A DNA stretch of 63,829 nucleotides, counting the filler, from Octopus bimaculoides (Eukaryota): the NCBI RefSeq assembly GCF_001194135.2. It is 7 parts of 6 records of this genome, joined end to end, with 100 filler letters (N's around TTAATTAATTAA, not from the genome) between each part and the next. Parts side by side here need not be neighbours in the genome. Positions count along the whole stretch, not along the records: positions 28,907 to 43,798 come from NC_068987.1; 6 more parts are not named here. The stretch is one strand, 5' to 3'. The notes under the pieces were generated by a model. That model was not told the origin of the DNA. It saw only the letters and a program-made list of their open reading frames with translations, and did not search any database. Each line of letters starts with the position of its first letter. The stretch's first letter is position 1. The position numbers were made by a program, and so were the translations under genes. Positions 28,807 to 43,898 of this stretch are shown here, one piece after another.

Positions 28807-31198
28807 NNNNNNNNNNNNNNNNNNNNNNNNNNNNNNNNNNNNNNNNNNNNTTAATTAATTAANNNNNNNNNNNNNNNNNNNNNNNNNNNNNNNNNNNNNN
28901 NNNNNNATATATACATACACACACACACATATACATACGTATACATATATATATATTTCAACAAGTATTACGCATATGCTGTTTACACACTTACCCACAC
29001 ACATACACGTGTGTGTGTGTGTGTGTGTGAGAGAGTGTGTGTGTGTGTTTGTGTGTGTCTGTGTGTGTGCAATTCTGTGATAGCGAGTAGTCATAACTCA
29101 TATTTTTTACCTTAGACATAATTAGAAATAGGAGCAAATTACGCCATACTATGACAACCGTAAACTAATTAGATGCATCTTATTTCGAAACAACTTGCGG
29201 CTATCTTTAATTAACAGAAAATGCTATTCAAGTATGCTTTTCAACAGGAGATATGATATATATATGTATGTGTGTGTGTGTTTGTTTGTGTATATGTGTG
29301 TATAAATGTATGTATGTATATATATATATATATATATAAGTGTGTGTGTGTATTTATGTATTTATGTATGCATGTATATATACAGATACGTAACAGCATA
29401 CATATGCGTGAGTGTTACCTGTTTTATAATGAGCATTTATCTAAGCTTACAGTGCGGTTGATGAATTTGATGGGTTTTGCGTGACTGCAAATAGCAATTT
29501 TAAAATTTTATGGATTAAATTTGTGGTAGGGCAAATACTTCAAATATAACATTAATTTAAAATCTTACATACACTCGCACACACACACACACACTCATAT
29601 GTATATANNNNNNNNNNNNNNNNNNNNNNNNNNNNNNNNNNNNNNNNNNNNNNNNNNNNNNNNNNNNNNNNNNNNNNNNNNNNNNNNNNNNNNNNNNNNN
29701 NNNNNNNNNNNNNNNNNNNNNNNNNNNNNNNNNNNNNNNNNNNNNNNNNNNNNNNNNNNNNNNNNNNNNNNNNNNNNNNNNNNNNNNNNNNNNNNNNNNN
29801 NNNNNNNNNNNNNNNNNNNNNNNNNNNNNNNNNNNNNNNNNNNNNNNNNNNNNNNNNNNNNNNNNNNNNNNNNNNNNNNNNNNNNNNNNNNNNNNNNNNN
29901 NNNNNNNNNNNNNNNNNNNNNNNNNNNNNNNNNNNNNNNNNNNNNNNNNNNNNNNNNNNNNNNNNNNNNNNNNNNNNNNNNNNNNNNNNNNNNNNNNNNN
30001 NNNNNNNNNNNNNNNNNNNNNNNNNNNNNNNNNNNNNNNNNNNNNNNNNNNNNNNNNNNNNNNNNNNNNNNNNNNNNNNNNNNNNNNNNNNNNNNNNNNN
30101 NNNNNNNNNNNNNNNNNNNNNNNNNNNNNNNNNNNNNNNNNNNNNNNNNNNNNNNNNNNNNNNNNNNNNNNNNNNNNNNNNNNNNNNNNNNNNNNNNNNN
30201 NNNNNNNNNNNNNNNNNNNNNNNNNNNNNNNNNNNNNNNNNNNNNNNNNNNNNNNNNNNNNNNNNNNNNNNNNNNNNNNNNNNNNNNNNNNNNNNNNNNN
30301 NNNNNNNNNNNNNNNNNNNNNNNNNNNNNNNNNNNNNNNNNNNNNNNNNNNNNNNNNNNNNNNNNNNNNNNNNNNNNNNNNNNNNNNNNNNNNNNNNNNN
30401 NNNNTATATATATATATATATGTATATACTCATATATTTATATATATGTGTACGTGTTGTGTACATGTATACAAATGTTTGTATATGTAAGTGTGTGTAT
30501 ATATATATATATATATGCATATTCAGTTACATTATATGTACCTCGGTAATATTGGATTATTATTCTTGACAGTTGACCAATAACAAAGCACTGATTTCCT
30601 TGCACAACTATGTTAAACACTTAGTTTACTGCTGCATCATTTCTTTTATTAATATTTACAATAATTACCCTTTCCTTCTAGTCTGCTATAGAATATTAGC
30701 TTATATCTCATGATACAATCGCCCGTCCTCTAATGAAACACACAATGAAAACTGAGCTGCATATTTGACCATAAGCAGTATTACATGTTTTTTTTTTTTC
30801 TAAGAACGAGAAACTTATTAAAAACTTTGTATACCGTTTATAGAGTCATTTACATTATGATACATGATTATAGATAAGATATATTGCTGCTGCATTTTAC
30901 TTGCCATCTACTAGTTATTTTGCGCATGCTAAGTCAGATAAATTTTAGGTGAAATGCACTCAAGAAAATATCTTTATGAGTTACAACATTTTTATTTTCT
31001 TTAAAAAAATCTACTAACAGCGACATATGAGGGTTGCAATGACTAATGACGTTTTTAATCTGTTCTATAAGCAATTTATTTTTAAGTGCTGGCATCGGAA
31101 ATATTACCGCACATAAAGTATGTTTGTTGAATAAATTATTGAAGTGTAAAGAACAAGATAATATTTGAAAATCATTTGTCAATGTCTTTTGTATTTAG

Positions 31199-31225
31199 GA
31201 AGCCTGAATTTCGACTTCCTTTGAT
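31199..31225 (+). CDS. Candidate 27-nt alternative exon (phase-1 reading xGA-SLNFDFL*; phase-2 reading KPEFRLPL)
   Basis: Acceptor gtcttttgtatttag|G, donor GAT|gtaggt, downstream ACUAAC/GCAUG cluster. Host gene unknown; no transcript evidence. Confidence 0.5.
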
Positions 31226-31314
31226 GTAGGTTAAATAATAAATAAGAGATAATTTTCCTGGAAACCTATTTGACAATATGGCTACCTGGAAATTGTAGCA
31301 GCCAACACACCGTG

Positions 31315-31519
31315 ACTAACACGCATGGATGCCTTGTATTTTTCATTATGTTAACGATTTACTAACATCATGTAACTTTACTGCTATACAAACTACTAAC
31401 AGCATGACAAGACATATATTACTGTTCACCAAAACTAACCGCATGATGGCTTCGAAACCATAACAATTTGCATGACTTTGTGAAAAATCATATTAACATT
31501 AAGCATTACTAACCGCATG
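31315..31519 (+). promoter_or_regulatory. RNA-level regulatory cluster: 5x ACTAAC (QKI/STAR) paired with GCATG (Rbfox)
   Basis: ACTAAC at 31315, 31361, 31395, 31434, 31508; GCATG at 31323, 31402, 31441, 31515; TGCATG at 31469. Confidence 0.75.
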
Positions 31520-32039
31520 GGGCTTTTTATATTCTTTATCATTATAGAATTGCTCGATGACAAGAATTCATTATGTAATATTTGTTATTTCAAACAAGAT
31601 AAATACAGTATTTACAAAATTCATCCACATAAATATGTGTAACAAATTGGTAATAAATATAATGAAATATGTATGATAGATTTGAAATTATTAACTCTCA
31701 GAGATTTACAAAAATCTTTGAGAAGAATTGCTGGTTATATATGTTTCTCTTTTCTTCGCATATTACTTAAACACTATTTTGTGAATAATTGAAACATGAA
31801 TATATTCCTTTGGAAATGTATCGCAGTATTTATTCATAAGAAATATGAAATACGGAAATAGGATTGAAAATACAATTCATAGATAGAAGCAAAAATGCAC
31901 ATATGAGTGTGTGCGTGTGTGTATAAACATATGTATATATGCATATACACAAATATATATATAATACATACTTTAAATGTTCAATATCTTTTGATAATTA
32001 TGCATAATTGCTTTATATATATGCACTGTGCATAATACT

Positions 32040-32161
<122 letters not shown>

Positions 32162-33097
32162 GTTTATATAATACTATGGCAAGATGGAAAGTATTGTCAT
32201 ATTAATGGGCCCAGTGTATAACGCAAATCTTAAGTAATAAGATCATTAATTTTAGGGCCGTTATCTACATCACATTATCATAAAAATTAAGGAACTCAAT
32301 GCTAGTATTATTTTAACGAAATTATGTTGAAATTGAAACTTATTTCCACTAAATTTAAATAAAAGGACTTGGAATTTTACCAGTAGATTATGATTTACTC
32401 GGCCATCATTCAGCAAATGCATCCTGAATAGCACTGTCCGAGAACACGATGGTTATTTCCATTCTAGCATTGTACCTAAATAACGCATAATCAAATTAAT
32501 GCCAAGTTCAGTATATCTTCCATTTCACAAGTTATTCGAAACTAAAATAGAATATATTGTAAAACAGTATAAAAGCTGCATAAATAAGGATAAAATGTAT
32601 TATGTTGGTCAATCATATGATAATTTCGATAAATTACAAATACACATTCTTTATTAAAGGATAAATTTTTTTAGTAAGCAGACCATCATAATATCATGAA
32701 TAAATACATTAAAAATGGATGAGTATAAAAGATAGAGGAATGGATATCAGTGGCCACATATCCACGAATTCATCCACTATCCAATAAATATTTTCCCAAT
32801 GTTCCAATGTTTAAATTTCAATTCTTCACAAAATTTCTAATATTTATTCATTTATCTGCCAAAGAGCATACGTAATATATATANNNNNNNNNNNNNNNNN
32901 NNNNNNNNNNNNNNNNNNNNNNNNNNNNNNNNNNNNNNNNNNNNNNNNNNNNNNNNNNNNNNNNNNNNNNNNNNNNNNNNNNNNNNNNNNNNNNNNNNNN
33001 NNNNNNNNNNNNNNNNNNNNNNNNNNNNNNNNNNNNNNNNNNNNNNNNNNNNNNNNNNNNNNNNNNNNNNNNNNNNNNNNNNNNNNNNNNNNNNNNN

Positions 33098-33129
<32 letters not shown>

Positions 33130-34215
33130 TACATAAATACATACATACATACATCCATACGCACACCAGACCTGGAGTGACAATATTCATGTTAAACAAT
33201 ACACCTAGGAAAAGCTTTTATATTCATCAGAGCTTTCATCTTATTCCTTTGTATTTCTTTTTACTTTGTGATCTGGAATAGTTTATTCTTAAAGATATTA
33301 TGGAGAAGATGAATGCATTCATATGAAATATCTCAAGGGGGTAGTGTGCTCCATTGCAATGCCTTTATGCAAAATCTGAAGTTTTCCTTTCGAGCTCAAT
33401 CGTGCTCTCCCGCCTTGAATATATGTGTTACCTCTCTATAGACAAAATATTGGATTTTTATGTTTATACGTCATTTACCAATGTGTCTGTTACCTGGAGA
33501 GATTTGGCGAAAGCACTGCTGGGAAAACGTTGCTAACTCCGACGTTAATAAAGCGTTCATTTTTCCTCAAGATGTTATATCCTACCGAAACTGTCCGTCG
33601 AGGGATGCTACAGTTTTCCCTTTGAACATCTAGCTTCCTATCAGATTATATTATTTCATCACTTTCTCTCTCATAATACTTCATTTCTGGTGAACTCAAG
33701 CGTTCGGCATGGTTCCCCACTCTCTTCCTTAGTACAGCAATCACTTACTTGTCACCAAGTCAAAAAGCGACTATTTATAAAGAATATACTAAACTCCATG
33801 CATAACGAATATTCTCCAAACTAGCATCATGTATACGCAACCAACAGAATAATCCATACCAGTACTCGTTCTAGGAACTATCCAAAACAACGAGCGCAAT
33901 GACTTGTCTTACAAAAACATCTATTGAGCATAAACATCTATTGAACATAAACAGCACTTAACAACAGCATTCACAATACTTCCAATTATAATTTCTATTA
34001 TATAACCTTCATTATAAAGGAGAATATGTCCAGGATTGAAAACCGTTTACAGAAAAAAAATCACGTTGAAAATGCAGACACTTTTAATTAAGTCCAGGAA
34101 AACATTTTGACACATTAAAGGAAACGTTAATCCCACTCATGTGAAAGTGTTTATGAGGGGCATGTGCGGTGCCCATTTCAGGTTCAGCGACTATATATAT
34201 ATTTATGCATATTTA

Positions 34216-34282
<67 letters not shown>

Positions 34283-34478
34283 GCATATATATGAAAGTAT
34301 AATTTTATAATCTAAATTTAATCAGAATTTAAAATATAGAGACATACGGCAAATTTTTAGCAGCCCATGCTTACTTTCGTCTTGACAAATTTACATTGTT
34401 TTTGTGTCATGTTATATTAAACTAACAACTAACAAACTGTTTTTTTTCTTTCTGCACAAATATTCGTACTTTCTTCAG

Positions 34479-34492
34479 ACCGCTACATATAA
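34479..34492 (+). CDS. Candidate alternative 3' exon start (phase-1 reading xAC-RYI*)
   Basis: Tandem ACTAAC branch-point motifs at 34421 and 34428, long pyrimidine tract, ttcttcag|A acceptor at 34478. Confidence 0.3.
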
Positions 34493-34744
34493 TCAACGTC
34501 ATTTCAATTAATTTTACACTTCCAATTTATTGTTTCATTAATGCTATCTAAATGAAAGTTATTTTTTATATGTTTTAACCTCCAGTGTTACTATTAACTA
34601 TTATGGAAATAAATATGCATTTAATTAATAAAGTATGGGAAACATTCTAATGTTTAATTACGTATTAATGAATATATTATATTGTAACCCATATGAAATA
34701 GTTTGTAAAGAGTTGGAATACGCAAGTTCACGTATTGCGATAGA

Positions 34745-35085
34745 CAGTGGCGGAGTGGCCGGGTTGCCAACTTGCCCGATGGCAAGTGGATCCCTGCACC
34801 ATTAGAGTTCATATATGGGGATCCATGGTATTATCTAAGGGACGCATCCCCTCGTTTTTTAGAATGTTTTCTTCACTCCTGGAAGAATGCATTAATCATT
34901 TCAGCTTGGCTGTGTTTGTAGACAGTTGAAAAGAATACTTTTAGCAAAACAAAAAAAAAAAGAAATAGATGATCGCATTATAGTTGCGGGTGGGCCCCCT
35001 TATAGTCGCAGTGGGCCCCCTTGTAGTTGCAATGGGCCCCCTTAGTCTTCTGGCAAACAATATTTTTAGACCCAGTCCGCCACTG
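34745..35085. mobile_element. hAT-like MITE (341 bp)
   Basis: TIRs CAGTGGCGGAGTGG / CCAGTCCGCCACTG (13 of 14 complementary); 8-bp flanks GCGATAGA vs GTGGTAGT (5/8, decayed TSD); three ~21-bp GGGCCCCCTT subterminal repeats. Confidence 0.8.
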
Positions 35086-36846
35086 GTGGTAGTGATTATG
35101 TGCAAATACATACGTATTTACACACTGGGTGTGTCTGTTAGTGAAGTGTTTCTTAGGGCAATTTCGAGACACGGTAATCGATCTATACCCTAGAAACTGA
35201 GAGTCAGTGTACATCCGTGAAGAATAACGGCTAAAAAGCACTTCCATACTTCCCAAACCCAGGAACTCCCGAACTGCATATATATATGCAGGCGGGGCTG
35301 TGTAGTATGTATGTATGTATATTTATCAACCCATGTAATTAATTAATTAACGAGCAAATTCTTTAAATTTATAAATATCAACAGCACAGTAATATGATAC
35401 GTATAATAGCATCACCGACTACGAAATAAACCACTCACGTAATACAATATGAATGTATACATTTGTATGTATACATATGTCGTCACTCGTATTGTAACTG
35501 AAATGGTGAAAATATTTGACAGCATATCAGCCTGCATTCATACCATTACAATAACTATAATATATATTTTCCAATATTTTGGATGCATCTATCATTTCTT
35601 TAAATGAGTTCGCATCATAATAAGTCATTGCAAAAATTGCTGCCAAACAAAAGCTCAACGATTTTGTAAATCCTAACATATTGACACATGTTATTTGAAG
35701 CTTTAGTTTCATAGTTACGAGATCATATATTTTGCACTAGTGTGGAGTAAGCTAATTTAATTGCAAAATATTTAATGCAAGAAAAAACCAACATATCACG
35801 TTACATTGTTACATATATATTCATTATTAATCATAATATGTATTTACTAGACAAATCATGGAGAAACATTTTAGCTATGAAACAAACCATCTGTAAGTTC
35901 ACCTTAATGTCTCTATTTGATTTTGTCCTTTATTTAAAGGGAAACGGCATTTGGATAGCATTATAGAAAGGAAAGTTTAAATTTGAAAGTCATTTATTTT
36001 GGGTTTCATTTGTATATTTCCATAAATATGCTAACAGGTATACATAATGCGTACATAATGTGTATATATATATATATATATATATGTATATANNNNNNNN
36101 NNNNNNNNNNNNNNNNNNNNNNNNNNNNNNNNNNNNNNNNNNNNNNNNNNNNNNNNNNNNNNNNNNNNNNNNNNNNNNNNNNNNNNNNNNNNNNNNNNNN
36201 NNNNNNNNNNNNNNNNNNNNNNNNNNNNNNNNNNNNNNNNNNNNNNNNNNNNNNNNNNNNNNNNNNNNNNNNNNNNNNNNNNNNNNNNNNNNNNNNNNNN
36301 NNNNNNNNNNNNNNNNNNNNNNNNNNNNNNNNNNNNNNNNNNNNNNNNNNNNNNNNNNNNNNNNNNNNNNNNNNNNNNNNNNNNNNNNNNNNNNNNNNNN
36401 NNNNNNNNNNNNNNNNNNNNNNNNNNNNNNNNNNNNNNNNNNNNNNNNNNNNNNNNNNNNNNNNNNNNNNNNNNNNNNNNNNNNNNNNNNNNNNNNNNNN
36501 NNNNNNNNNNNNNNNNNNNNNNNNNNNNNNNNNNNNNNNNNNNNNNNNNNNNNNNNNNNNNNNNNNNNNNNNNNNNNNNNNNNNNNNNNNNNNNNNNNNN
36601 NNNNNNNNNNNNNNNNNNNNNNNNNNNNNNNNNNNNNNNNNNNNNNNNNNNNNNNNNNNNNNNNNNNNNNNNNNNNNNTATATATATATATATATATATT
36701 TAGATATATATATATATTTAGATATATATATAATTTACGATGAATTTCTTGACCATACAATTATATTCCATAATGTATAACCTTTTATGAAGGACTATTT
36801 TAATAAAACATAGACTCAATTCATTCTGCCATATTCCTCTTTTCAG

Positions 36847-36902
36847 GTTTGAAGCGCTGTGTGATAATTTCAATCTCAAGTCATCGATCTGAAACAATTT
36901 GA
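36847..36902 (+). CDS. Candidate alternative 3' exon (phase-1 xGT-LKRCVIISISSHRSETI*; phase-2 FEALCDNFNLKSSI*)
   Basis: Strong acceptor gccatattcctcttttcag|G at 36846; all three frames stop within 56 nt. Confidence 0.3.
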
Positions 36903-38651
36903 AGCCAAAATAATTTACCATGTATCATTTTTTATTATATGTTTCTCTGAAGAGTTCCCTTAAAGCGGGTTTCAGAAAGAAACCATTAACTGATGTAGTC
37001 CATGAAATTTGAATCGACGGAAATTCACAATATTAAATTTAAACTGGGTTTTTTTTCTTTCATCATTTTTTCTCTTACTTCGTAGTCTGAAAAAGTCCAT
37101 GCATTTTTTATAAGCCGCTAATTAATTATCAATGAATACATTATTTGACACCCTTGGTAATATAAATTTGCGCTAATAATATGTCTAGTGTGTAGTTGAA
37201 TAATATTACATCTGCAATTATGCATAACATTTCACTGAAGTATTAAAACCTGCGTACAAATTTAGTTTACTTGTTTCATTATATTTAACAATTAATTATT
37301 ATTTCTTAGTTTACTCAAAGATAATCATATAAGTAATCCACGCTTGAATTTAGTGTGATGATGAAGCAATTGTACTCACGTATATGATATCTTAGTCATA
37401 TTTAAGACGGAAGCGTATAAAGACTCTTGAACAACTTAAAGTACATGATATGTAATAGAAACATGTTAGTACATTGTTAGGGGTAAGATAAAGTTAATCT
37501 GATCGAATTGACTTTTAAACAAAAGGACACAGTTTGAACGGAAATGAGTATAACCAATATCGCAATAAGAATGCGTAAAGAGAAATTAATTGTAGATTGT
37601 GTTTATTTTTAGACACAATGTCATACTTAGCCACGCTACATTTTTTTGCAAGACACCTATTATAAACACGATTTTTTGCATTGCTAAACATGGTGTATTC
37701 ATAGTAGATTGCTTTCAATTATGAGGCAAAATTGCACCGCCCATGCAATGAAATTGATATTGGATTTTCAAAGCTTTTCTTCATACTGTAGATATTTACA
37801 GCTCGTATAATGTGTTACTCTGCATGAATCATTATGAGCCTCATCATACGTGGTTTTCAAACAGCTTCCGTATACTTAACATCAACGAATTTTACTAGAA
37901 GAAGTCCATATAGTATTTTATAATCAATATACAAAACACTGCAGGGTTATACTTTAGCTCTAATGAAAATTAGCTATTTATTTAAATTCATATTAATATT
38001 GTTAATACAAAAAGTAGTTATTTCATCAGGAAAAAATAGAACGGTATCAGTTTAAATACATTGAATAATTAGTTCCTCATTAGTTGTAAATGAAAATGTC
38101 TGCGGTCAAATTACATTTTGATGGTTCCGATATCAATGATATTAGGTCGAGTAATTACCTTTATAAAAACGAAAAAAATTGATTCCATGCAATTATTGTT
38201 ATTTGGCCAGGACAAACGTAATTGCACATATTTTAATGTTATATACAAAGGGGTAGATAATGAACTGCAAAGAGGAGGCTTTAGTTTATTCTTAATTTCA
38301 CATTGTGAGATTGAAATGATGTAGTAGGCAAGGGTAAACTGAGTAGAAGTCAAACGTTTTTTACCAAGAGTAGTTGTTTGTGTGTCTATTTCAGAAATCA
38401 ATATTATATTAATATATCGGTATTATACTATTCGGACCACTTTTGCGAGCTTCATTATGGAATAAGATTTAGAACATAACTCTAAGACATTAACATAATC
38501 AAATATATTACAACAATGTAAAGCTTTCAGCAAACTTAACAACGGTATACAATAGAAAATATAATATATAACCTTTAATATGAAGAAGCAAGTTCGTGTA
38601 TTAGGCTCACTTAAAACAACTCTACATAATGAAATAACAATAAATATTGTA

Positions 38652-38701
<50 letters not shown>

Positions 38702-39544
38702 ATAAGGGCATTACTATACAGTAATGCCTCACGCTTAGAGGGACTTTATAAGTAAAAACTACCAAAATAAGCACTTATTTACCGATCGCGAGGGAATGCA
38801 ACTTTCAAAGCTAACCTCCTAAAAACTTTTAACTTAACGGCAAACCACTGGTTTCATAACTAATACAGCAAAACTATGCAGTAAGCTGCATCTTTTGTTC
38901 ATCAGTGCACGTATGGTCAAGACACATAAAGAATAAACAAAAATCAACATACCCTGATGTACCCAACACATTACAATGACTCCTGTTCATCCTTATATAT
39001 CCGTGAAAGGGTCGGGCTTTTCAAGTTACACTTCGGCAACATGTGCTTTTACAGAATAATATTCAGCACTGAATATATTCTAATTATTTATAATATAATA
39101 TAAGGATAAAATCTTTATAAGAATTTATCAAGTAGTCAGCGTGAAAAAACCTCATAAGGAAAAAAAACATCATTTTTTTCCATAAATATATATAATATAA
39201 TTTATATAAGGGCATTACACACACACACACACACACACACATACATACACACTCGCACGTCCCCTCCACATATATATATATAAGAAGAAATTTTGCCGGA
39301 AGTTAACGGGAATTTAACAACAAGGAATTTAACAGTAGGATATGAGAATCGTGATTTACTCTCTGTAAGAAAATACCAAGCGAGATTTACCAACAGCCAT
39401 TTACACTCTGAGTCCTATCACCTGGGGGTCAAATAAGGTACTTGTCAGCACTAAAATAGGTATGATTTACAGCTCTCTTCTGAACCAAATTTTCAGACAT
39501 GAAACCATTATTATTATTATAGATATTTCTTTTGTTATCGTTAT

Positions 39545-39728
39545 TAAGGTTGTGAGCTTATTGAATCGTTAACAAAGAGGATAAAATGCTTAGCGGCATT
39601 TTGTTCGACGATTTACATTTCATCATTTCGAGGTCGATAAAATAACTGCGAGTGAGCACTTGTGTCGATGTAATCGACTAAAACCCGTCCCCGAGATTAC
39701 TGGCCTTGTACCAACATTTGAAACCAAT
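39545..39728 (+). mobile_element. SINE family A (old)
   Basis: Diverged match to family A. Confidence 0.7.
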
Positions 39729-39863
39729 TTTATAACACAATTATTCATTGTTTTATGATCAAAGACTTGAGAACAAATTGCCGCACAAATTTTCTTATGT
39801 AGAACTTATACTAACAACGGAATGTTTATGTAGATGTTTACTAACAACTGCTCCTTATTTCAG

Positions 39864-39939
39864 AGCATGACGATGAATTCGATGCGACCACCTCTCTTCT
39901 TGCCTAAAAATAAAACTGAAAGTAATTTTTTGTTTCGCG
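39864..39939 (+). CDS. Candidate 76-nt exon (phase-1 xAG-HDDEFDATTSLLA*; phase-0 open SMTMNSMRPPLFLPKNKTESNFLFR)
   Basis: TACTAAC at 39809 and 39839, acceptor ctccttatttcag|A, donor GCG|gtatgt. Confidence 0.5.
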
Positions 39940-41387
39940 GTATGTCATTTTGCTCCTAATGTGTATATATATGTAAATATATATTCTGCTTTGTTTCCAT
40001 CACTGTTTATTTCTTTTATTATTTTATTTTTTGTTTTACACTAACAAAGTATTGATATATTTTTTATTTCATGAATTTTATTTTTTCTTAAACTTTTCGT
40101 TAATTTTTCGTTTTACTTTATTTTCTTTATATATGTTTTTTTACACTTATTTAATCCTAGAATCTGTGTTTGAATGCCAGGCTTTATACTAACCCGGATG
40201 CCTAATTAACAGGTGCCATTTCTAATTTTTCATTCTTGCCCCGTATGAAGCTACCTTATCGGTAGGTCTCTTTCAATTTTTAGATGTTTTACACTTTAAC
40301 GCATATGCCCAAATACTTTATATACGTAAAGTGAAATATATATATATATATACATATATATATANNNNNNNNNNNNNNNNNNNNNNNNNNNNNNNNNNNN
40401 NNNNNNNNNNNNNNNNNNNNNNNNNNNNNNNNNNNNNNNNNNNNNNNNNNNNNNNNNNNNNNNNNNNNNNNNNNNNNNNNNNNNNNNNNNNNNNNNNNNN
40501 NNNNNNNNNNNNNNNNNNNNNNNNNNNNNNNNNNNNNNNNNNNNNNNNNNNNNNNNNNNNNNNNNNNNNNNNNNNNNNNNNNNNNNNNNNNNNNNNNNNN
40601 NNNNNNNNNNNNNNNNNNNNNNNNNNNNNNNNNNNNNNNNNNNNNNNNNNNNNNNNNNNNNNNNNNNNNNNNNNNNNNNNNNNNNNNNNNNNNNNNNNNN
40701 NNNNNNNNNNNNNNNNNNNNNNNNNNNNNNNNNNNNNNNNNNNNNNNNNNNNNNNNNNNNNNNNNNNNNNNNNNNNNNNNNNNNNNNNNNNNNNNNNNNN
40801 NNNNNNNNNNNNNNNNNNNNNNNNNNNNNNNNNNNNNNNNNNNNNNNNNNNNNNNNNNNNNNNNNNNNNNNNNNNNNNNNNNNNNNNNNNNNNNNNNNNN
40901 NNNNNNNNNNNNNNNNNNNNNNNNNNNNNNNNNNNNNNNNNNNNNNNNNNNNNNNNNNNNNNNNNNNNNNNNNNNNNNNNNNNNNNNNNNNNNNNNNNNN
41001 NNNNNNNNNNNNNNNNNNNNNNNNNNNNNNNNNNNNNNNNNNNNNNNNNNNNNNNNNNNNNNNNNNNNNNNNNNNNNNNNNNNNNNNNNNNNNNNNNNNN
41101 NNNTTTTATGTTTATATGAGTGTAAAAGAGAGTTTTAACATATTTTAAACTATTTCTCGCTCTGCTTTCTGAATATGAATATGGTTTTGCACAATTGTAT
41201 AATATAAAGATATAAATAAAAACTAAATTCTCTTTCCAGTAACGTAAACTTTTAAAGTGATTTTTAAATGTTTGCATGTATATGTGCATTTATAGGGGGA
41301 ATTCACAAAAAAAAAACAACAGATGAAGTCAGGTGGTGTAGAAAACAAATAGATGTATTAGTATAACGCTCAGGAATTGAAAAAGTT

Positions 41388-41423
41388 TTTTAACGTTTCT
41401 AGCCTACGCTCCTCCACAGAAAG
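41388..41423 (-). ncRNA. Minimal type I HHR motif, A6U variant, damaged stem II
   Basis: CTTT-CTGTGGA-G-GAGC-gtag-GCTA-GAAA-CG-T-T-AAAA; paralog of 22491-22526. Confidence 0.6.
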
Positions 41424-41725
41424 GAACACAGAAAGAAACAAGGAAAGAAACAAGGAGAGAAAAAATGTGTGTAGTTGTCAGCGATCTACCTCTGTGTGTT
41501 GCCTCTGAGTACGTATGTATGTGTGTGTGTGTGTGTGTCTGTGTCTGTATGTGCTTGTGTGTGTCTTTGTGTGCATATGCATGAATTTATATAGATGTGT
41601 ATACCTATCATTTAAGGAATTGTAAAATATAAAAACATATTTAGCATCACAAGATCTATGGTGTTTACTTAGCGAATGAAAATAAAACTTATTATTACCC
41701 TCCCTGCAATCTCTCTCCCTTTTTC

Positions 41726-41782
<57 letters not shown>

Positions 41783-42001
41783 ACATCTATGTTCTTTTAA
41801 TATGGGATAAAATGTTTTCAAAAATTTCATCCATTATGAAAATTATAAACAATTACAAATAAGGGCAAAAAATAGAAAATTCTATGGCAATATGCTGAGA
41901 AATAAAATGTAAATCGTCAACCATCACAATTTACACCACTATGAATACACATTGTGCTGAATCCAGGAAAGTAAGCTAACAGAATTTTTTCAAATGCGTT
42001 A

Positions 42002-42051
42002 TCTCTATATTTCGGGATTAATCAAACGGATTTTCCCCTCATCAGTAGAGA
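42002..42051 (-). ncRNA. Type I HHR, copy 1 (core intact, stem III deleted)
   Basis: TCTCTA-CTGATGA-GGGGAAAATCCGTTTGATTAATCCC-GAAA-T-A-TAGAGA. Confidence 0.75.
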
Positions 42052-42488
42052 ATACTATAAGAAATAAATCAAATGTTTACAAGCATCCATGGAAAAAAGC
42101 AGAAGCAAATGTCATGTGTACACATAAGTACCCCAATTATATCTAAATATAAAATTTTGTAGTGAGCCTCAGCACACGTGGGATTGGTCAGGAACCACAA
42201 CTTAGAGTGGACATCAGTCCCGATGTGAATGGCAATAAATTTAGTTTTAATACAGGATACATTTTTTTTCAAAAACTTCAACAAGTGGCCCGCATATTAA
42301 AATATCTTTAAGGGAGAAAATTATAAACAATTATAAATAGATATGGGCAAATGAAAAAAAAATCTATACCAATATGCTGAGAAATAGACTTTAAATCGTT
42401 AATCAGCTCATACAATATCCATCAGTATGAATACACGTCGTGCTGAAATCGAGGAAAGCAAGCTAACGGAACTTTTTTAAATGCGTTA

Positions 42489-42546
42489 CCTCTATATTGA
42501 ATCAATTTCGGTATTAATCCAACGGATTTCCCCTCATTAGTTGAGA
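42489..42546 (-). ncRNA. Type I HHR, copy 2 (G5A lesion)
   Basis: TCTCAA-CTAATGA-GGGGAAATCCGTTGGATTAATACC-GAAA-TTG-ATT-CAA-T-A-TAGAGG. Confidence 0.75.
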
Positions 42547-42931
42547 ATACGATAAGAAATAAATTAAATACTTACAAGCACCCATAGAAAAAAGCAGAAG
42601 CAAAAGTCATGTGTACACATAAGTACCCCAGTTATATCTAAATATAAAATTCCGTAGCGAATCTCAGCACACATACTTTTGCTTCTGCTTTTTCTCCACT
42701 TGGTGAAATTTTTGAATGATATTTATCCTATACTAAAAGTAAATTTATTGCCATTCACTTCGAGACTGGTGACCACTCTAAGTTGTGATTCCTGACCAAT
42801 CCCACGTGTGCTGAGGCTCGCTACGGAATTTTATATTTAGATATAACTTGGGTACTTATGTGTACACATGACTTTAGCTTCTGCTTTTGTCCATGGGTGC
42901 TTGTAAGTATTTCATTTATTTCTTATCATAT

Positions 42932-42990
42932 TCTCTACTGATGTGGTGCAAATCCGTTGGATTAATTCCGAAATTGATTCAATATAGAGA
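42932..42990 (+). ncRNA. Type I HHR, copy 3 (A9U lesion)
   Basis: TCTCTA-CTGATGT-GGTGCAAATCCGTTGGATTAATTCC-GAAA-TTG-ATT-CAA-T-A-TAGAGA. Confidence 0.78.
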
Positions 42991-43171
42991 TAACGCATTT
43001 TAGAAAATTCTGTTAGCTTGCTTTCCTGGATTCAGCACAATGTGTATTCATAGTGGTGTATACTGTATATGGTGATTGACGATTTAAATTCTATTTCTCA
43101 GCATATTGACATAGACATTTTTTCATTTGCCCTTATTTATAATTATCTCTCTTTCTCTCTCCATTTATCTA

Positions 43172-43210
<39 letters not shown>

Positions 43211-43387
43211 NNNNNNNNNNNNNNNNNNNNNNNNNNNNNNNNNNATATATATATGTATGTATATATATATATATATACTCGATTCAAACATGAACAAGCA
43301 AGAAAAAACTCGAGCAAACAACAACGCGAGGACGTGGAATAAGTACAGTGTTATTGGACGCACAGGTGTGGAAACAAAAGAAAGAGG

Positions 43388-43422
43388 ATTTAACGTTTCA
43401 AATGGAGCTCTTCGTCAGAAAT
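43388..43422 (-). ncRNA. Minimal type I HHR motif, stem II decayed
   Basis: ATTT-CTGACGA-A-GAGC-tcc-ATTT-GAAA-CG-T-T-AAAT; the 3' arm GCTC appears to have decayed to ATTT by transitions. Confidence 0.6.
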
Positions 43423-43571
43423 ATAGGAAAAGTCCAAAGAAGGGAAAACAGAGAAAGAATATATATATATATATTTATACATTCTTTTAATACAGTTCTA
43501 TATTTAAGAGATGAGGAATTATGTACATTATTTACATTTGATAAATATATGTCCTCATCTTGCTTGTTGTT

Positions 43572-43617
43572 AACACTACCTTTCGGCTGATATACCCTGC
43601 AGCCATCATCAGGTGTC
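43572..43617 (-). ncRNA. Minimal type I HHR motif with intact catalytic core
   Basis: GACAC-CTGATGA-T-GGCTG-cagggtatat-CAGCC-GAAA-GG-T-A-GTGTT: stem I 5 bp, stem II 5 bp, GUA triplet. Confidence 0.8.
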
Positions 43618-43665
43618 TTGGGGAAATGTCGATCCTGAGTTCTCATTAATAAGGTATTTTTCAAA

Positions 43666-43789
<124 letters not shown>

Positions 43790-43898
43790 CGGGTCCCTNN
43801 NNNNNNNNNNNNNNNNNNNNNNNNNNNNNNNNNNNNNNNNNNTTAATTAATTAANNNNNNNNNNNNNNNNNNNNNNNNNNNNNNNNNNNNNNNNNNNN

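What the first reader, a model, noticed from the sequence alone, without database searches (positions are those of the whole stretch)
31315..31519. Dense composite ACUAAC + GCAUG (QKI/How + Rbfox) cluster
Seen: five ACTAAC in 205 bp (rough expectation ~0.07 at ~65% AT). Four are followed 1-2 nt later by GCATG and the fifth by ATCATG, and there is one further TGCATG. The spacers are unrelated to each other, so this is not a simple tandem repeat. It starts 90 nt downstream of a candidate 5' splice site. Known: STAR proteins (QKI/How) bind ACUAAY, Rbfox binds (U)GCAUG, and both enhance inclusion from the downstream intron. Inference: a hard-wired tissue-specific (muscle, glial or neuronal) splicing or 3' UTR switch with an unusually fixed motif spacing that suggests cooperative binding.
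Basis: partly seen in the sequence, partly recalled or inferred. Interest (0 to 1): 0.8.

Follow-up and report, generated by a model that had tools for sequence, protein, structure and literature searches.

The report
Branchpoint-like plus Rbfox motif cluster
Five copies of a 12-13-base composite (ACTAAC, 1-2 bases, GCATG) sit in 205 bases of otherwise unrelated, non-coding animal-like DNA; this is far beyond chance and looks like a docking array for two known splicing regulators, but no gene, transcript or related species could be found to test that.

Summary
ACTAAC occurs at 31315, 31361, 31395, 31434 and 31508 (+). Four copies are followed after 1-2 nt by GCATG and one by A-TCATG. A further TGCATG lies at 31469, preceded by cATAAC. 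No dinucleotide shuffle (0 of 2000) gave two or more composites in the whole piece; four are observed. The flanks and spacers are no more alike than random sequence, TRF finds no array, and the piece holds no other copy or inverted partner. So this is not a simple tandem repeat, and neutral decay of one is implausible.

All copies face the same way and neither strand folds unusually. The last TACTAAC sits 34 nt upstream of the first AG, behind one of the best polypyrimidine/AG acceptors in the piece (31547/31548). The most likely reading is an RNA-level array on the + strand: branchpoint-like STAR/SF1 sites, each abutted by an Rbfox site, acting in splicing control.

This remains an inference. 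No exon, protein match, transcript or orthologous sequence could be obtained. A DNA-level binding array or a mobile-element origin is not excluded. Metagenome minisatellites with the same core look like chance. Interest is moderate.

The parts
31315..31327 (+). Composite unit 1: ACTAAC-ac-GCATG (2-nt linker)
31361..31372 (+). Composite unit 2, degenerate: tACTAAC-a-TCATG (one mismatch in the Rbfox half). Followed by TAAC at +7, the only canonical QKI half-site in the cluster.
31395..31406 (+). Composite unit 3: tACTAAC-a-GCATG
31434..31445 (+). Composite unit 4: aACTAAC-c-GCATG
31459..31474 (+). Possible degenerate unit: cATAAC-aatt-TGCATG. This is the only full UGCAUG hexamer in the cluster.
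31508..31519 (+). Composite unit 5: tACTAAC-c-GCATG. It also sits in branch-point position for the acceptor at 31547/31548.
31520..31547 (+). Pyrimidine-rich tract (gggctttttatattctttatcattat) ending in the first AG after unit 5. Candidate 3' splice site; acceptor score at the 99.5th percentile of all AGs in the piece; 34 nt from the branch A.
31199..31225 (+). Acceptor at the 98th percentile, donor GAT|GTAGGT at the 96.6th. Not verified and not statistically distinguished.
31013..31021 (+). Isolated tACTAAC-a-GC..., about 300 nt upstream of the cluster. Possibly a decayed further unit, or chance.

Best explanation
The cluster is most likely an array of composite protein-binding sites read on a + strand transcript. 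Each unit joins two motifs:
- a perfect branchpoint-like ACUAAC, the site of the KH/STAR proteins SF1, QKI/How and their relatives;
- a GCAUG Rbfox site, 1-2 nt further downstream.

The two sites abut, so a protein on one half is placed against, or in the way of, a protein on the other half. There are two possible modes, and the position-dependent rules known for both protein families allow both at once:
- Rbfox and a STAR protein co-occupy the array and enhance use of an upstream 5' splice site or exon.
- Rbfox and/or QKI occlude SF1/U2 at these branch points and so repress the strong 3' splice site at 31547/31548.

Shown: the motifs, their non-random juxtaposition, one orientation, unrelated spacers, no RNA structure, and a strong branchpoint/polypyrimidine/AG arrangement at the 3' end of the cluster.

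Inferred: that the + strand is transcribed, that these proteins bind, and that splicing is the process affected.
For: - Five ACTAAC and four exact composites in 205 nt; 0 of 2000 shuffles give two or more composites.
- The cores match at 54 of 55 specified positions, while the flanks are at random identity (0.28-0.29 against 0.29) and the spacers score like shuffled sequence. By my own reasoning (not a computed test), neutral decay of a repeat should not spare only the core, so the core looks selected or recently laid down.
- All units have the same orientation, there is no inverted copy in 12.5 kb, and the piece holds no other copy.
- Folding energy is at the level of shuffles on both strands (z = 0.29 and 0.28), as expected for linear single-strand sites rather than a structured RNA.
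- The last TACTAAC lies 34 nt before the first AG, behind an acceptor at the 99.5th percentile.
- Elsewhere in the piece, + strand CTAAC is again followed by top-3.5% acceptors (34481, 39864, 40161), and never on the - strand (P about 0.02).
- Literature: ACUAAC and UGCAUG are co-enriched in the 200-300 nt downstream of muscle-included exons, with multiple UACUAAC-like copies (matching the branchpoint-like motif) downstream of Vldlr exon 16 (PMC1950531, PMC1331982). QKI and RBFOX2 jointly activate the Snap23 microexon from downstream sites (PMC12064062). Fox proteins bound next to a branch point block SF1 (review PMC2777236). QKI competes with SF1 at ACUAAY branch points (PMC3983035).
Against: - There is no evidence that the locus is transcribed at all. 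No protein-coding exon was detectable: two database searches with about 5200 aa of translated ORFs from both strands returned nothing.
- Conservation could not be tested.
- None of the five composites has U before GCAUG, the preferred Rbfox hexamer.
- Only 1 of 5 units has the QKI half-site UAAY within 20 nt.
- The strand evidence is weak (P about 0.02, threshold chosen after the fact).
- The motifs were recognised after the fact by a reader who was looking for known motifs.
Confidence: 0.4

Rival explanations
1. The cluster is part of a mobile element. It could be subterminal transposase-binding repeats of a DNA transposon (as in En/Spm or Ac), or an internal binding-site array of a retroelement. 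The 12-mer would then serve the element rather than the host, and its likeness to RNA-binding motifs would be coincidence.
For: - Short motifs repeated at irregular spacing among unrelated spacers are typical of subterminal regions (established knowledge).
- The piece does contain dispersed repeats (41821-43031).
- Only 12.5 kb of the genome is available, with assembly gaps at 29608-30404 and 32884-33097 that could hide the other end.
Against: - There is no inverted copy of the motif, no terminal inverted repeat and no second copy in the piece.
- All units are in direct orientation, whereas subterminal repeats usually occur in both orientations and at both ends.
- There is no transposase or reverse-transcriptase ORF, and no protein hit from either strand.
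- Both halves match canonical RNA-binding motifs exactly.
Confidence: 0.2
2. [quoted passage not shown] It would then be an enhancer or insulator module of the kind seen in the gypsy Su(Hw) array, where about a dozen sites in one orientation are separated by AT-rich spacers.
For: - A conserved core of about 12 bp repeated 5-6 times in about 200 bp, with unconstrained spacers, is the anatomy of a homotypic binding-site cluster.
- There is no proof of transcription.
Against: - The linker varies in both length (1 or 2 nt) and base. A single rigid DNA-binding surface tolerates this poorly, while two independent RNA-binding modules tolerate it easily.
- The nearest DNA motif I could name, Myb YAACNG, fits only 3 of 5 units, and with the disfavoured A or C at the variable position (read from the sequence; motif from memory).
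- Strict same-strand orientation is not needed for DNA sites.
- The last unit fits a branchpoint/polypyrimidine/AG arrangement.
Confidence: 0.15
3. The two proteins are the same, but the setting is a 3' UTR or a non-coding RNA rather than an intron. The array would then control mRNA stability, translation or localisation, or act as a sponge for cytoplasmic QKI/How and Rbfox isoforms.
For: - No coding exon is detectable anywhere in the piece.
- Candidate + strand exons at 40161-40261 and after 31548 have stops or AT-driven frames, read directly from the sequence.
- AATAAA-like signals are frequent.
- STAR proteins are classic 3' UTR regulators (PMC1331982 discussion).
Against: - There is no transcript evidence either way.
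- The branchpoint/polypyrimidine/AG arrangement at 31508-31547 points to splicing.
- AATAAA is expected often by chance at 70% A+T.
Confidence: 0.12
4. The cluster is a relic of an ordinary minisatellite whose unit happened to contain the 12-mer, and it has no function.
For: - The same composite is the core of about 21 unrelated, apparently neutral minisatellite families in metagenome contigs. Such arrays therefore arise by chance in repeat-rich animal DNA.
- Units 4 and 5 share ATATTA at -18 and the same linker.
Against: - The spacers are at random identity and differ in length (22-62 nt), while the cores match at 54 of 55 positions. Neutral decay would erode the cores equally.
- TRF detects nothing.
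- In the metagenome arrays the cores mutate as freely as the rest of the unit, which is the opposite of what is seen here.
Confidence: 0.08

Closest known systems
Intronic splicing enhancers downstream of muscle- or brain-specific exons that combine (U)GCAUG (Rbfox) with ACUAAC (QKI). Examples: the motif sets of Das et al. 2007 and Sugnet et al. 2006, Vldlr exon 16, and the Snap23 microexon.
   Same: The two motifs are identical, they lie on the same strand, there are several copies within about 300 nt, and the position downstream of a candidate small exon fits.
   Different: In the published cases the two motifs are scattered independently. Here they are fused at a fixed 1-2 nt distance in every unit and repeated five times. 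The regulated exon is unproven, the organism is not a vertebrate, and nothing is known of conservation.
Repression at the branch point: Fox-1/2 at the -34 UGCAUG of calcitonin/CGRP exon 4 blocking SF1, and QKI-5 competing with SF1 at the NUMB exon 12 branchpoint.
   Same: A regulator site overlaps or abuts an SF1-type branch point just upstream of a polypyrimidine tract and AG. Unit 5 (31508-31519) with the acceptor at 31547/31548 has this layout.
   Different: The known cases have one site at one branch point. Here five branchpoint-like sequences, each with its own GCAUG, stretch over 205 nt, and four of them are too far from the AG to be ordinary branch points.
Juxtaposed cooperative sites in C. 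elegans egl-15: UGCAUG for ASD-1/FOX-1 next to GUGUG for SUP-12.
   Same: An Rbfox site directly abuts the site of a second tissue-specific RNA-binding protein, upstream of a regulated 3' splice site.
   Different: The partner motif is ACUAAC (STAR/SF1) rather than GUGUG. It lies 5' rather than 3' of GCAUG, and the unit is repeated.
Homotypic DNA binding-site arrays such as the gypsy Su(Hw) insulator, and the subterminal repeats of DNA transposons.
   Same: Several copies of a core of about 12 bp, in one orientation, lie among unconstrained AT-rich spacers.
   Different: No element ends, inverted copies or further genomic copies were seen. The linker length varies, and the core splits cleanly into two RNA motifs.

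Membership tests
Rbfox-dependent intronic splicing element | One or more (U)GCAUG on the transcribed strand | tested here: inconclusive
   Five GCATG and one TCATG lie on the + strand in 205 nt. Only one is the full TGCATG. Which strand is transcribed is unknown.
Rbfox-dependent intronic splicing element | Location within a few hundred nt of a regulated exon | tested here: inconclusive
   A candidate exon at 31199-31225 lies 90 nt upstream, and a candidate acceptor at 31547/31548 lies 28 nt downstream. No transcript or protein evidence exists.
Rbfox-dependent intronic splicing element | Motifs conserved between species; Rbfox binding and dependence | not testable with these tools
   No orthologous DNA or RNA data could be reached. 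Both protein searches returned nothing, and the metagenome contigs are unrelated.
QKI/How response element (bipartite STAR site) | Core NACUAAY | tested here: met
   Five exact ACTAAC on the + strand.
QKI/How response element (bipartite STAR site) | Half-site UAAY 1-20 nt downstream of the core | tested here: not met
   Only unit 2 has TAAC at +7. Unit 4 has TAAC at +22. Units 1, 3 and 5 have none. Neighbouring full cores 34-74 nt away might substitute, but that is inference.
Spliceosomal branch point with 3' splice site | UACUAAC-like sequence 18-40 nt upstream of the first AG, with a polypyrimidine tract between | tested here: met
   Met for unit 5 only: TACTAAC, 34 nt to the first AG, acceptor at the 99.5th percentile. 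For units 1-4 the first downstream AG is weak (21st-70th percentile).
Tandem repeat / minisatellite | Head-to-tail units that align along their whole length | tested here: not met
   TRF finds no array. Spacers of 22-62 nt are at random identity, and MAFFT aligns only the cores.
Dispersed repeat / mobile element | Further copies in the genome, terminal repeats, element-encoded ORFs | tested here: inconclusive
   None were found in the 12.5 kb available. The rest of the genome could not be searched.
Structured non-coding RNA | A fold more stable than shuffles, or a match to an Rfam family | tested here: not met
   z = 0.29 (+) and 0.28 (-). The only Rfam hits are sub-threshold microsatellite-driven miRNA look-alikes elsewhere in the piece.

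The most novel reading that the evidence does not exclude
The fixed fusion ACUAAC-N(1-2)-GCAUG may be a dedicated composite module. Every branchpoint-like sequence in a 205-nt zone would carry its own Rbfox site, so that Rbfox (with or against a STAR protein) gates SF1/U2 access to a whole set of real and decoy branch points. That would be a hard-wired, repeat-built tissue switch of a kind not described for Rbfox or QKI. My searches found the two motifs described as co-enriched or present together, but not as a fixed fused unit; the exact fused strings turned up only as unrelated sequences in other contexts (e.g. TCR, diagnostic and reference-gene papers).
Probability: 0.15. Interest if true: 0.7.

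Novelty: new variant of a known kind. Interest (0 to 1): 0.45.

Why it matters
Rbfox and QKI/How are conserved regulators of muscle and nervous-system splicing, and their motifs are known to co-occur. Whether the two proteins ever act through a fixed, abutting composite site is not known. The possibilities are co-binding, or mutual exclusion with each other and with SF1 at the branch point.

A natural array of five such units would be a ready-made substrate for asking this by binding assays and minigenes. If conserved, it would show that an invertebrate genome hard-wires the combination. If instead it proves to be a mobile-element fragment or an untranscribed site, it is a curiosity without wider meaning.

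Tried and rejected
1. **Tandem repeat.** Rejected: TRF finds nothing, spacers are at random identity, and only the cores align.

2. **Local dispersed or inverted repeat, MITE.** No second copy, no inverted motif and no terminal inverted repeats in the piece.

3. **Structured RNA, tRNA or Rfam family.** Nothing found.

4. **Finding the gene.** I translated ORFs around the cluster plus the candidate exon at 39864-39939 (557 aa), and then 4684 aa of filtered ORFs from both strands. Both searches against 5.8 billion proteins gave no hit at E <= 10 and E <= 1 respectively.

5. **Metagenome scan** for two composites 15-45 nt apart. It returned 43 contigs, all near-perfect minisatellites of about 21 unrelated families, mostly animal-like. 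Two carry insect-type BESS/C2H2 ORFs, and one carries a THAP/DDE transposase. I first took this as enrichment and then rejected that reading. These contigs carry one other minisatellite per 1.6 kb, so by my rough estimate an arbitrary 11-mer could plausibly turn up in dozens of arrays in a collection this large. In several arrays GCATG is a minority variant. Their cores mutate as freely as the rest of the unit. None resembles the window.

6. **A third conserved element** (CTT within 9 nt after 5 of 6 cores). The family-wise P is 0.08, which is not significant.

7. **Myb site (YAACNG).** It fits 3 of 5 units, and with disfavoured bases.

8. **Extended pairing of the 12-mer to U2 snRNA beyond the branch helix.** It does not fit (checked by eye against the human U2 sequence from memory).

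9. **miRNA-sponge reading.** Rejected because the linker base varies.

10. **A simple PWM exon finder** with a composition-corrected background. It was too strict to be useful and I replaced it with percentile ranking.

Full report
**Setting**

The piece (28907-43798) holds 12,522 real bases in six blocks separated by runs of N. It is 30% G+C and full of microsatellites such as (TA)n, (ATT)40 and (ACAT)n. It has no long ORFs, no tRNA and no Rfam family above threshold. This looks like eukaryotic, probably animal, non-coding DNA from a draft assembly. The finding lies in the block 30405-32883.

**The observation**

- ACTAAC occurs on the + strand at 31315, 31361, 31395, 31434 and 31508.
- GCATG follows after 2, 1, 1 and 1 nt at four of these. 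The fifth reads ACTAAC-A-TCATG.
- TGCATG at 31469 is preceded by cATAAC and may be a sixth, degenerate unit.

At this composition, 0.072 ACTAAC are expected in 205 nt, and 0.0035 composites per strand in the entire piece. None of 2000 dinucleotide-preserving shuffles gave two or more composites, against four observed. Only one shuffle reached 4 ACTAAC in any 205-nt window, and none reached 5.

**Not a repeat in the ordinary sense**

- TRF reports nothing here.
- MAFFT aligns only the cores.
- The 15 nt on either side of the cores are 28-29% identical pairwise, against a random expectation of 29%. Spacer alignment scores equal those of shuffled spacers, and spacer lengths are 22-62 nt.
- The cores match at 54 of 55 specified positions.
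- A sensitive self-comparison finds no other copy of 31100-31700 in the piece and no inverted partner. No inverted copy of the 12-mer exists with up to one mismatch, and nothing like terminal inverted repeats flanks the cluster.

A repeat decaying neutrally would lose its core as fast as its spacers. So either the core is maintained or gained by selection, or the whole segment is a recently laid-down unit, such as part of a mobile element whose design includes such motifs.

**What reads the core**

The core splits exactly into ACUAAC and GCAUG, joined by a linker that varies in base (A, C, C, AC) and in length.
- ACUAAC is the yeast-type branch point. It is the site of SF1 and of the STAR proteins QKI/How.
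- GCAUG is the Rbfox site.

A variable linker between two invariant halves suggests two modules rather than one rigid recognition surface. All units face the same way. Neither strand folds better than shuffles (z about 0.3). Both points fit linear sites on a single-stranded RNA.

The literature shows these two motifs enriched together in the 200-300 nt downstream of muscle-included exons in four vertebrates, with multiple UACUAAC-like copies downstream of Vldlr exon 16 (PMC1950531, PMC1331982). It also shows a microexon activated jointly by QKI and RBFOX2 from downstream sites (PMC12064062). In my searches the fused strings themselves turned up only as unrelated sequences in other contexts (e.g. 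TCR, diagnostic and reference-gene papers).

**Which splice site?**

I ranked all GT and AG sites in the piece with generic position weight matrices.
By my own rough estimate from the site counts (not a run test), several such pairs are expected in 25 kb of two-strand sequence by chance. The exon therefore remains a candidate only.
- The stronger signal is downstream. The last unit is TACTAAC. The first AG after it is 34 nt from the branch A, and the intervening sequence is a pyrimidine-rich tract. This acceptor (31547/31548) ranks at the 99.5th percentile.

Elsewhere in the piece, + strand CTAAC is followed by a top-3.5% acceptor as first AG at 34481, 39864 and 40161. None of the four minus-strand CTAAC is. 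Against randomly placed starts, this gives P about 0.02, with the threshold chosen after the fact. This is weak but consistent evidence that the + strand carries splice signals, and that ACUAAC serves as a branch point in this organism.

**Mechanism**

Two known mechanisms fit a regulator site glued to a branch point:
- Fox proteins at the -34 UGCAUG of calcitonin/CGRP exon 4 prevent SF1 from binding the branch point (review PMC2777236).
- QKI-5 competes with SF1 at ACUAAY branch points (PMC3983035).

By the position rules of both families, the same array could enhance an upstream exon and repress the downstream acceptor.

I rate an RNA-level splicing element on the + strand at 0.4. The same proteins acting in a UTR or non-coding RNA setting add about 0.12.

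**What could not be shown**

- Two searches of the 5.8-billion-protein collection returned nothing. One used ORFs around the cluster plus the best candidate exon. The other used 4684 aa of filtered ORFs from both strands. No gene, and hence no orthologous locus, could be fetched.
- Transcription, conservation and genomic copy number are untested.
- None of the five composites has the preferred U before GCAUG.
- Only one has the QKI half-site within 20 nt.

**The metagenome side-track**

A scan for two composites 15-45 nt apart gave 43 contigs. All are near-perfect minisatellites of about 21 unrelated families, with periods of 14-57 nt. Most sit in low-coding, animal-like contigs. Two carry insect-type BESS/C2H2 ORFs and one carries a THAP/DDE transposase.

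This looked like recurrent use of the composite, but I do not think it is, for four reasons:
- The same contigs hold one other minisatellite per 1.6 kb, so by my rough estimate an arbitrary 11-mer could plausibly turn up in dozens of arrays in a collection of this size.
- In several arrays GCATG is a minority variant.
- Cores and spacers mutate alike.
- None resembles the window.

The contrast is still useful: in those arrays whole units are alike, whereas in the window only the core is.

**Verdict**

This is a real, highly non-random and so far unique-looking cluster. It is best read as a composite STAR/SF1 plus Rbfox RNA element tied to splicing on the + strand. Mobile-element origin (0.2) and a DNA-level binding array (0.15) remain live rivals, and an inert repeat relic is unlikely (0.08). 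If real, it is a new variant of a known kind. Interest is moderate until transcription and conservation are checked.

Noticed in passing
L001-L043 (metagenome contigs): About 21 unrelated minisatellite families, mostly in animal-like contigs, have ACTAAC-N-GCATG in their unit. The linker is T (full UGCAUG) in about half of them. This is probably chance given one minisatellite per 1.6 kb in these contigs, but no scrambled-motif control could be run.
   Followed up: partly
L035 8464-9031 (-) and L022 0-218 (-): The 37-nt unit reads ACTAAC-g-GCATG-TGTGTTGTGTGCAG. It joins all three motif classes (QKI, Fox, CELF-like GU) reported downstream of muscle exons.
   Followed up: no
L015, L023, L028, L029 (e.g. 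L029 6626-7082 and 8318-8532): The same contig family holds two different arrays with a CTAAC...GCATG composite: a 57/114-nt unit ACTAAC-t-GCATG on one strand, and TTCTAAC-aa-GCATGC on the other. This is unlikely by chance in one contig, and it is unexplained.
   Followed up: no
window 39839-39945 (+): This is the cleanest candidate exon in the piece: TACTAAC, 18 nt, ttatttcag|AGCATG...CGCG|GTATGT (39864-39939, 76 nt, one open frame SMTMNSMRPPLFLPKNKTESNFLFR). It has no protein match.
   Followed up: partly
window 34420-34481 (+): A tandem AACTAAC AACTAAC is followed by a long T-rich tract and a 97.5th-percentile acceptor (cttcag|ACCGCT). It is another branchpoint-like arrangement on the + strand.
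   Followed up: partly
window 41821-43031: A dispersed element of about 480 bp is present as two direct copies (41821-42300 and 42299-42780, 78-90% identical in stretches), with a further inverted copy reaching 43031. It has no protein match and is unrelated to the finding.
   Followed up: no
window 32041-32159 and 43667-43787: Two perfect or near-perfect 40-copy trinucleotide arrays, (ATT)40 and (TTA)40, lie 11.5 kb apart. Every assembly gap is flanked by TA-rich microsatellites.
   Followed up: no
window 34978-35044: A 21-bp unit (TTATAGTTGCAGTGGGCCCCC) is repeated about three times in the most G+C-rich part of the piece (34.6-35.3 kb). This may be a SINE or other element fragment.
   Followed up: no
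window 31328-31528: CTT occurs within 9 nt after 5 of the 6 (G/T)CATG cores. It could hint at a third element (a PTB-like CUU), but the family-wise P is 0.08.
   Followed up: yes
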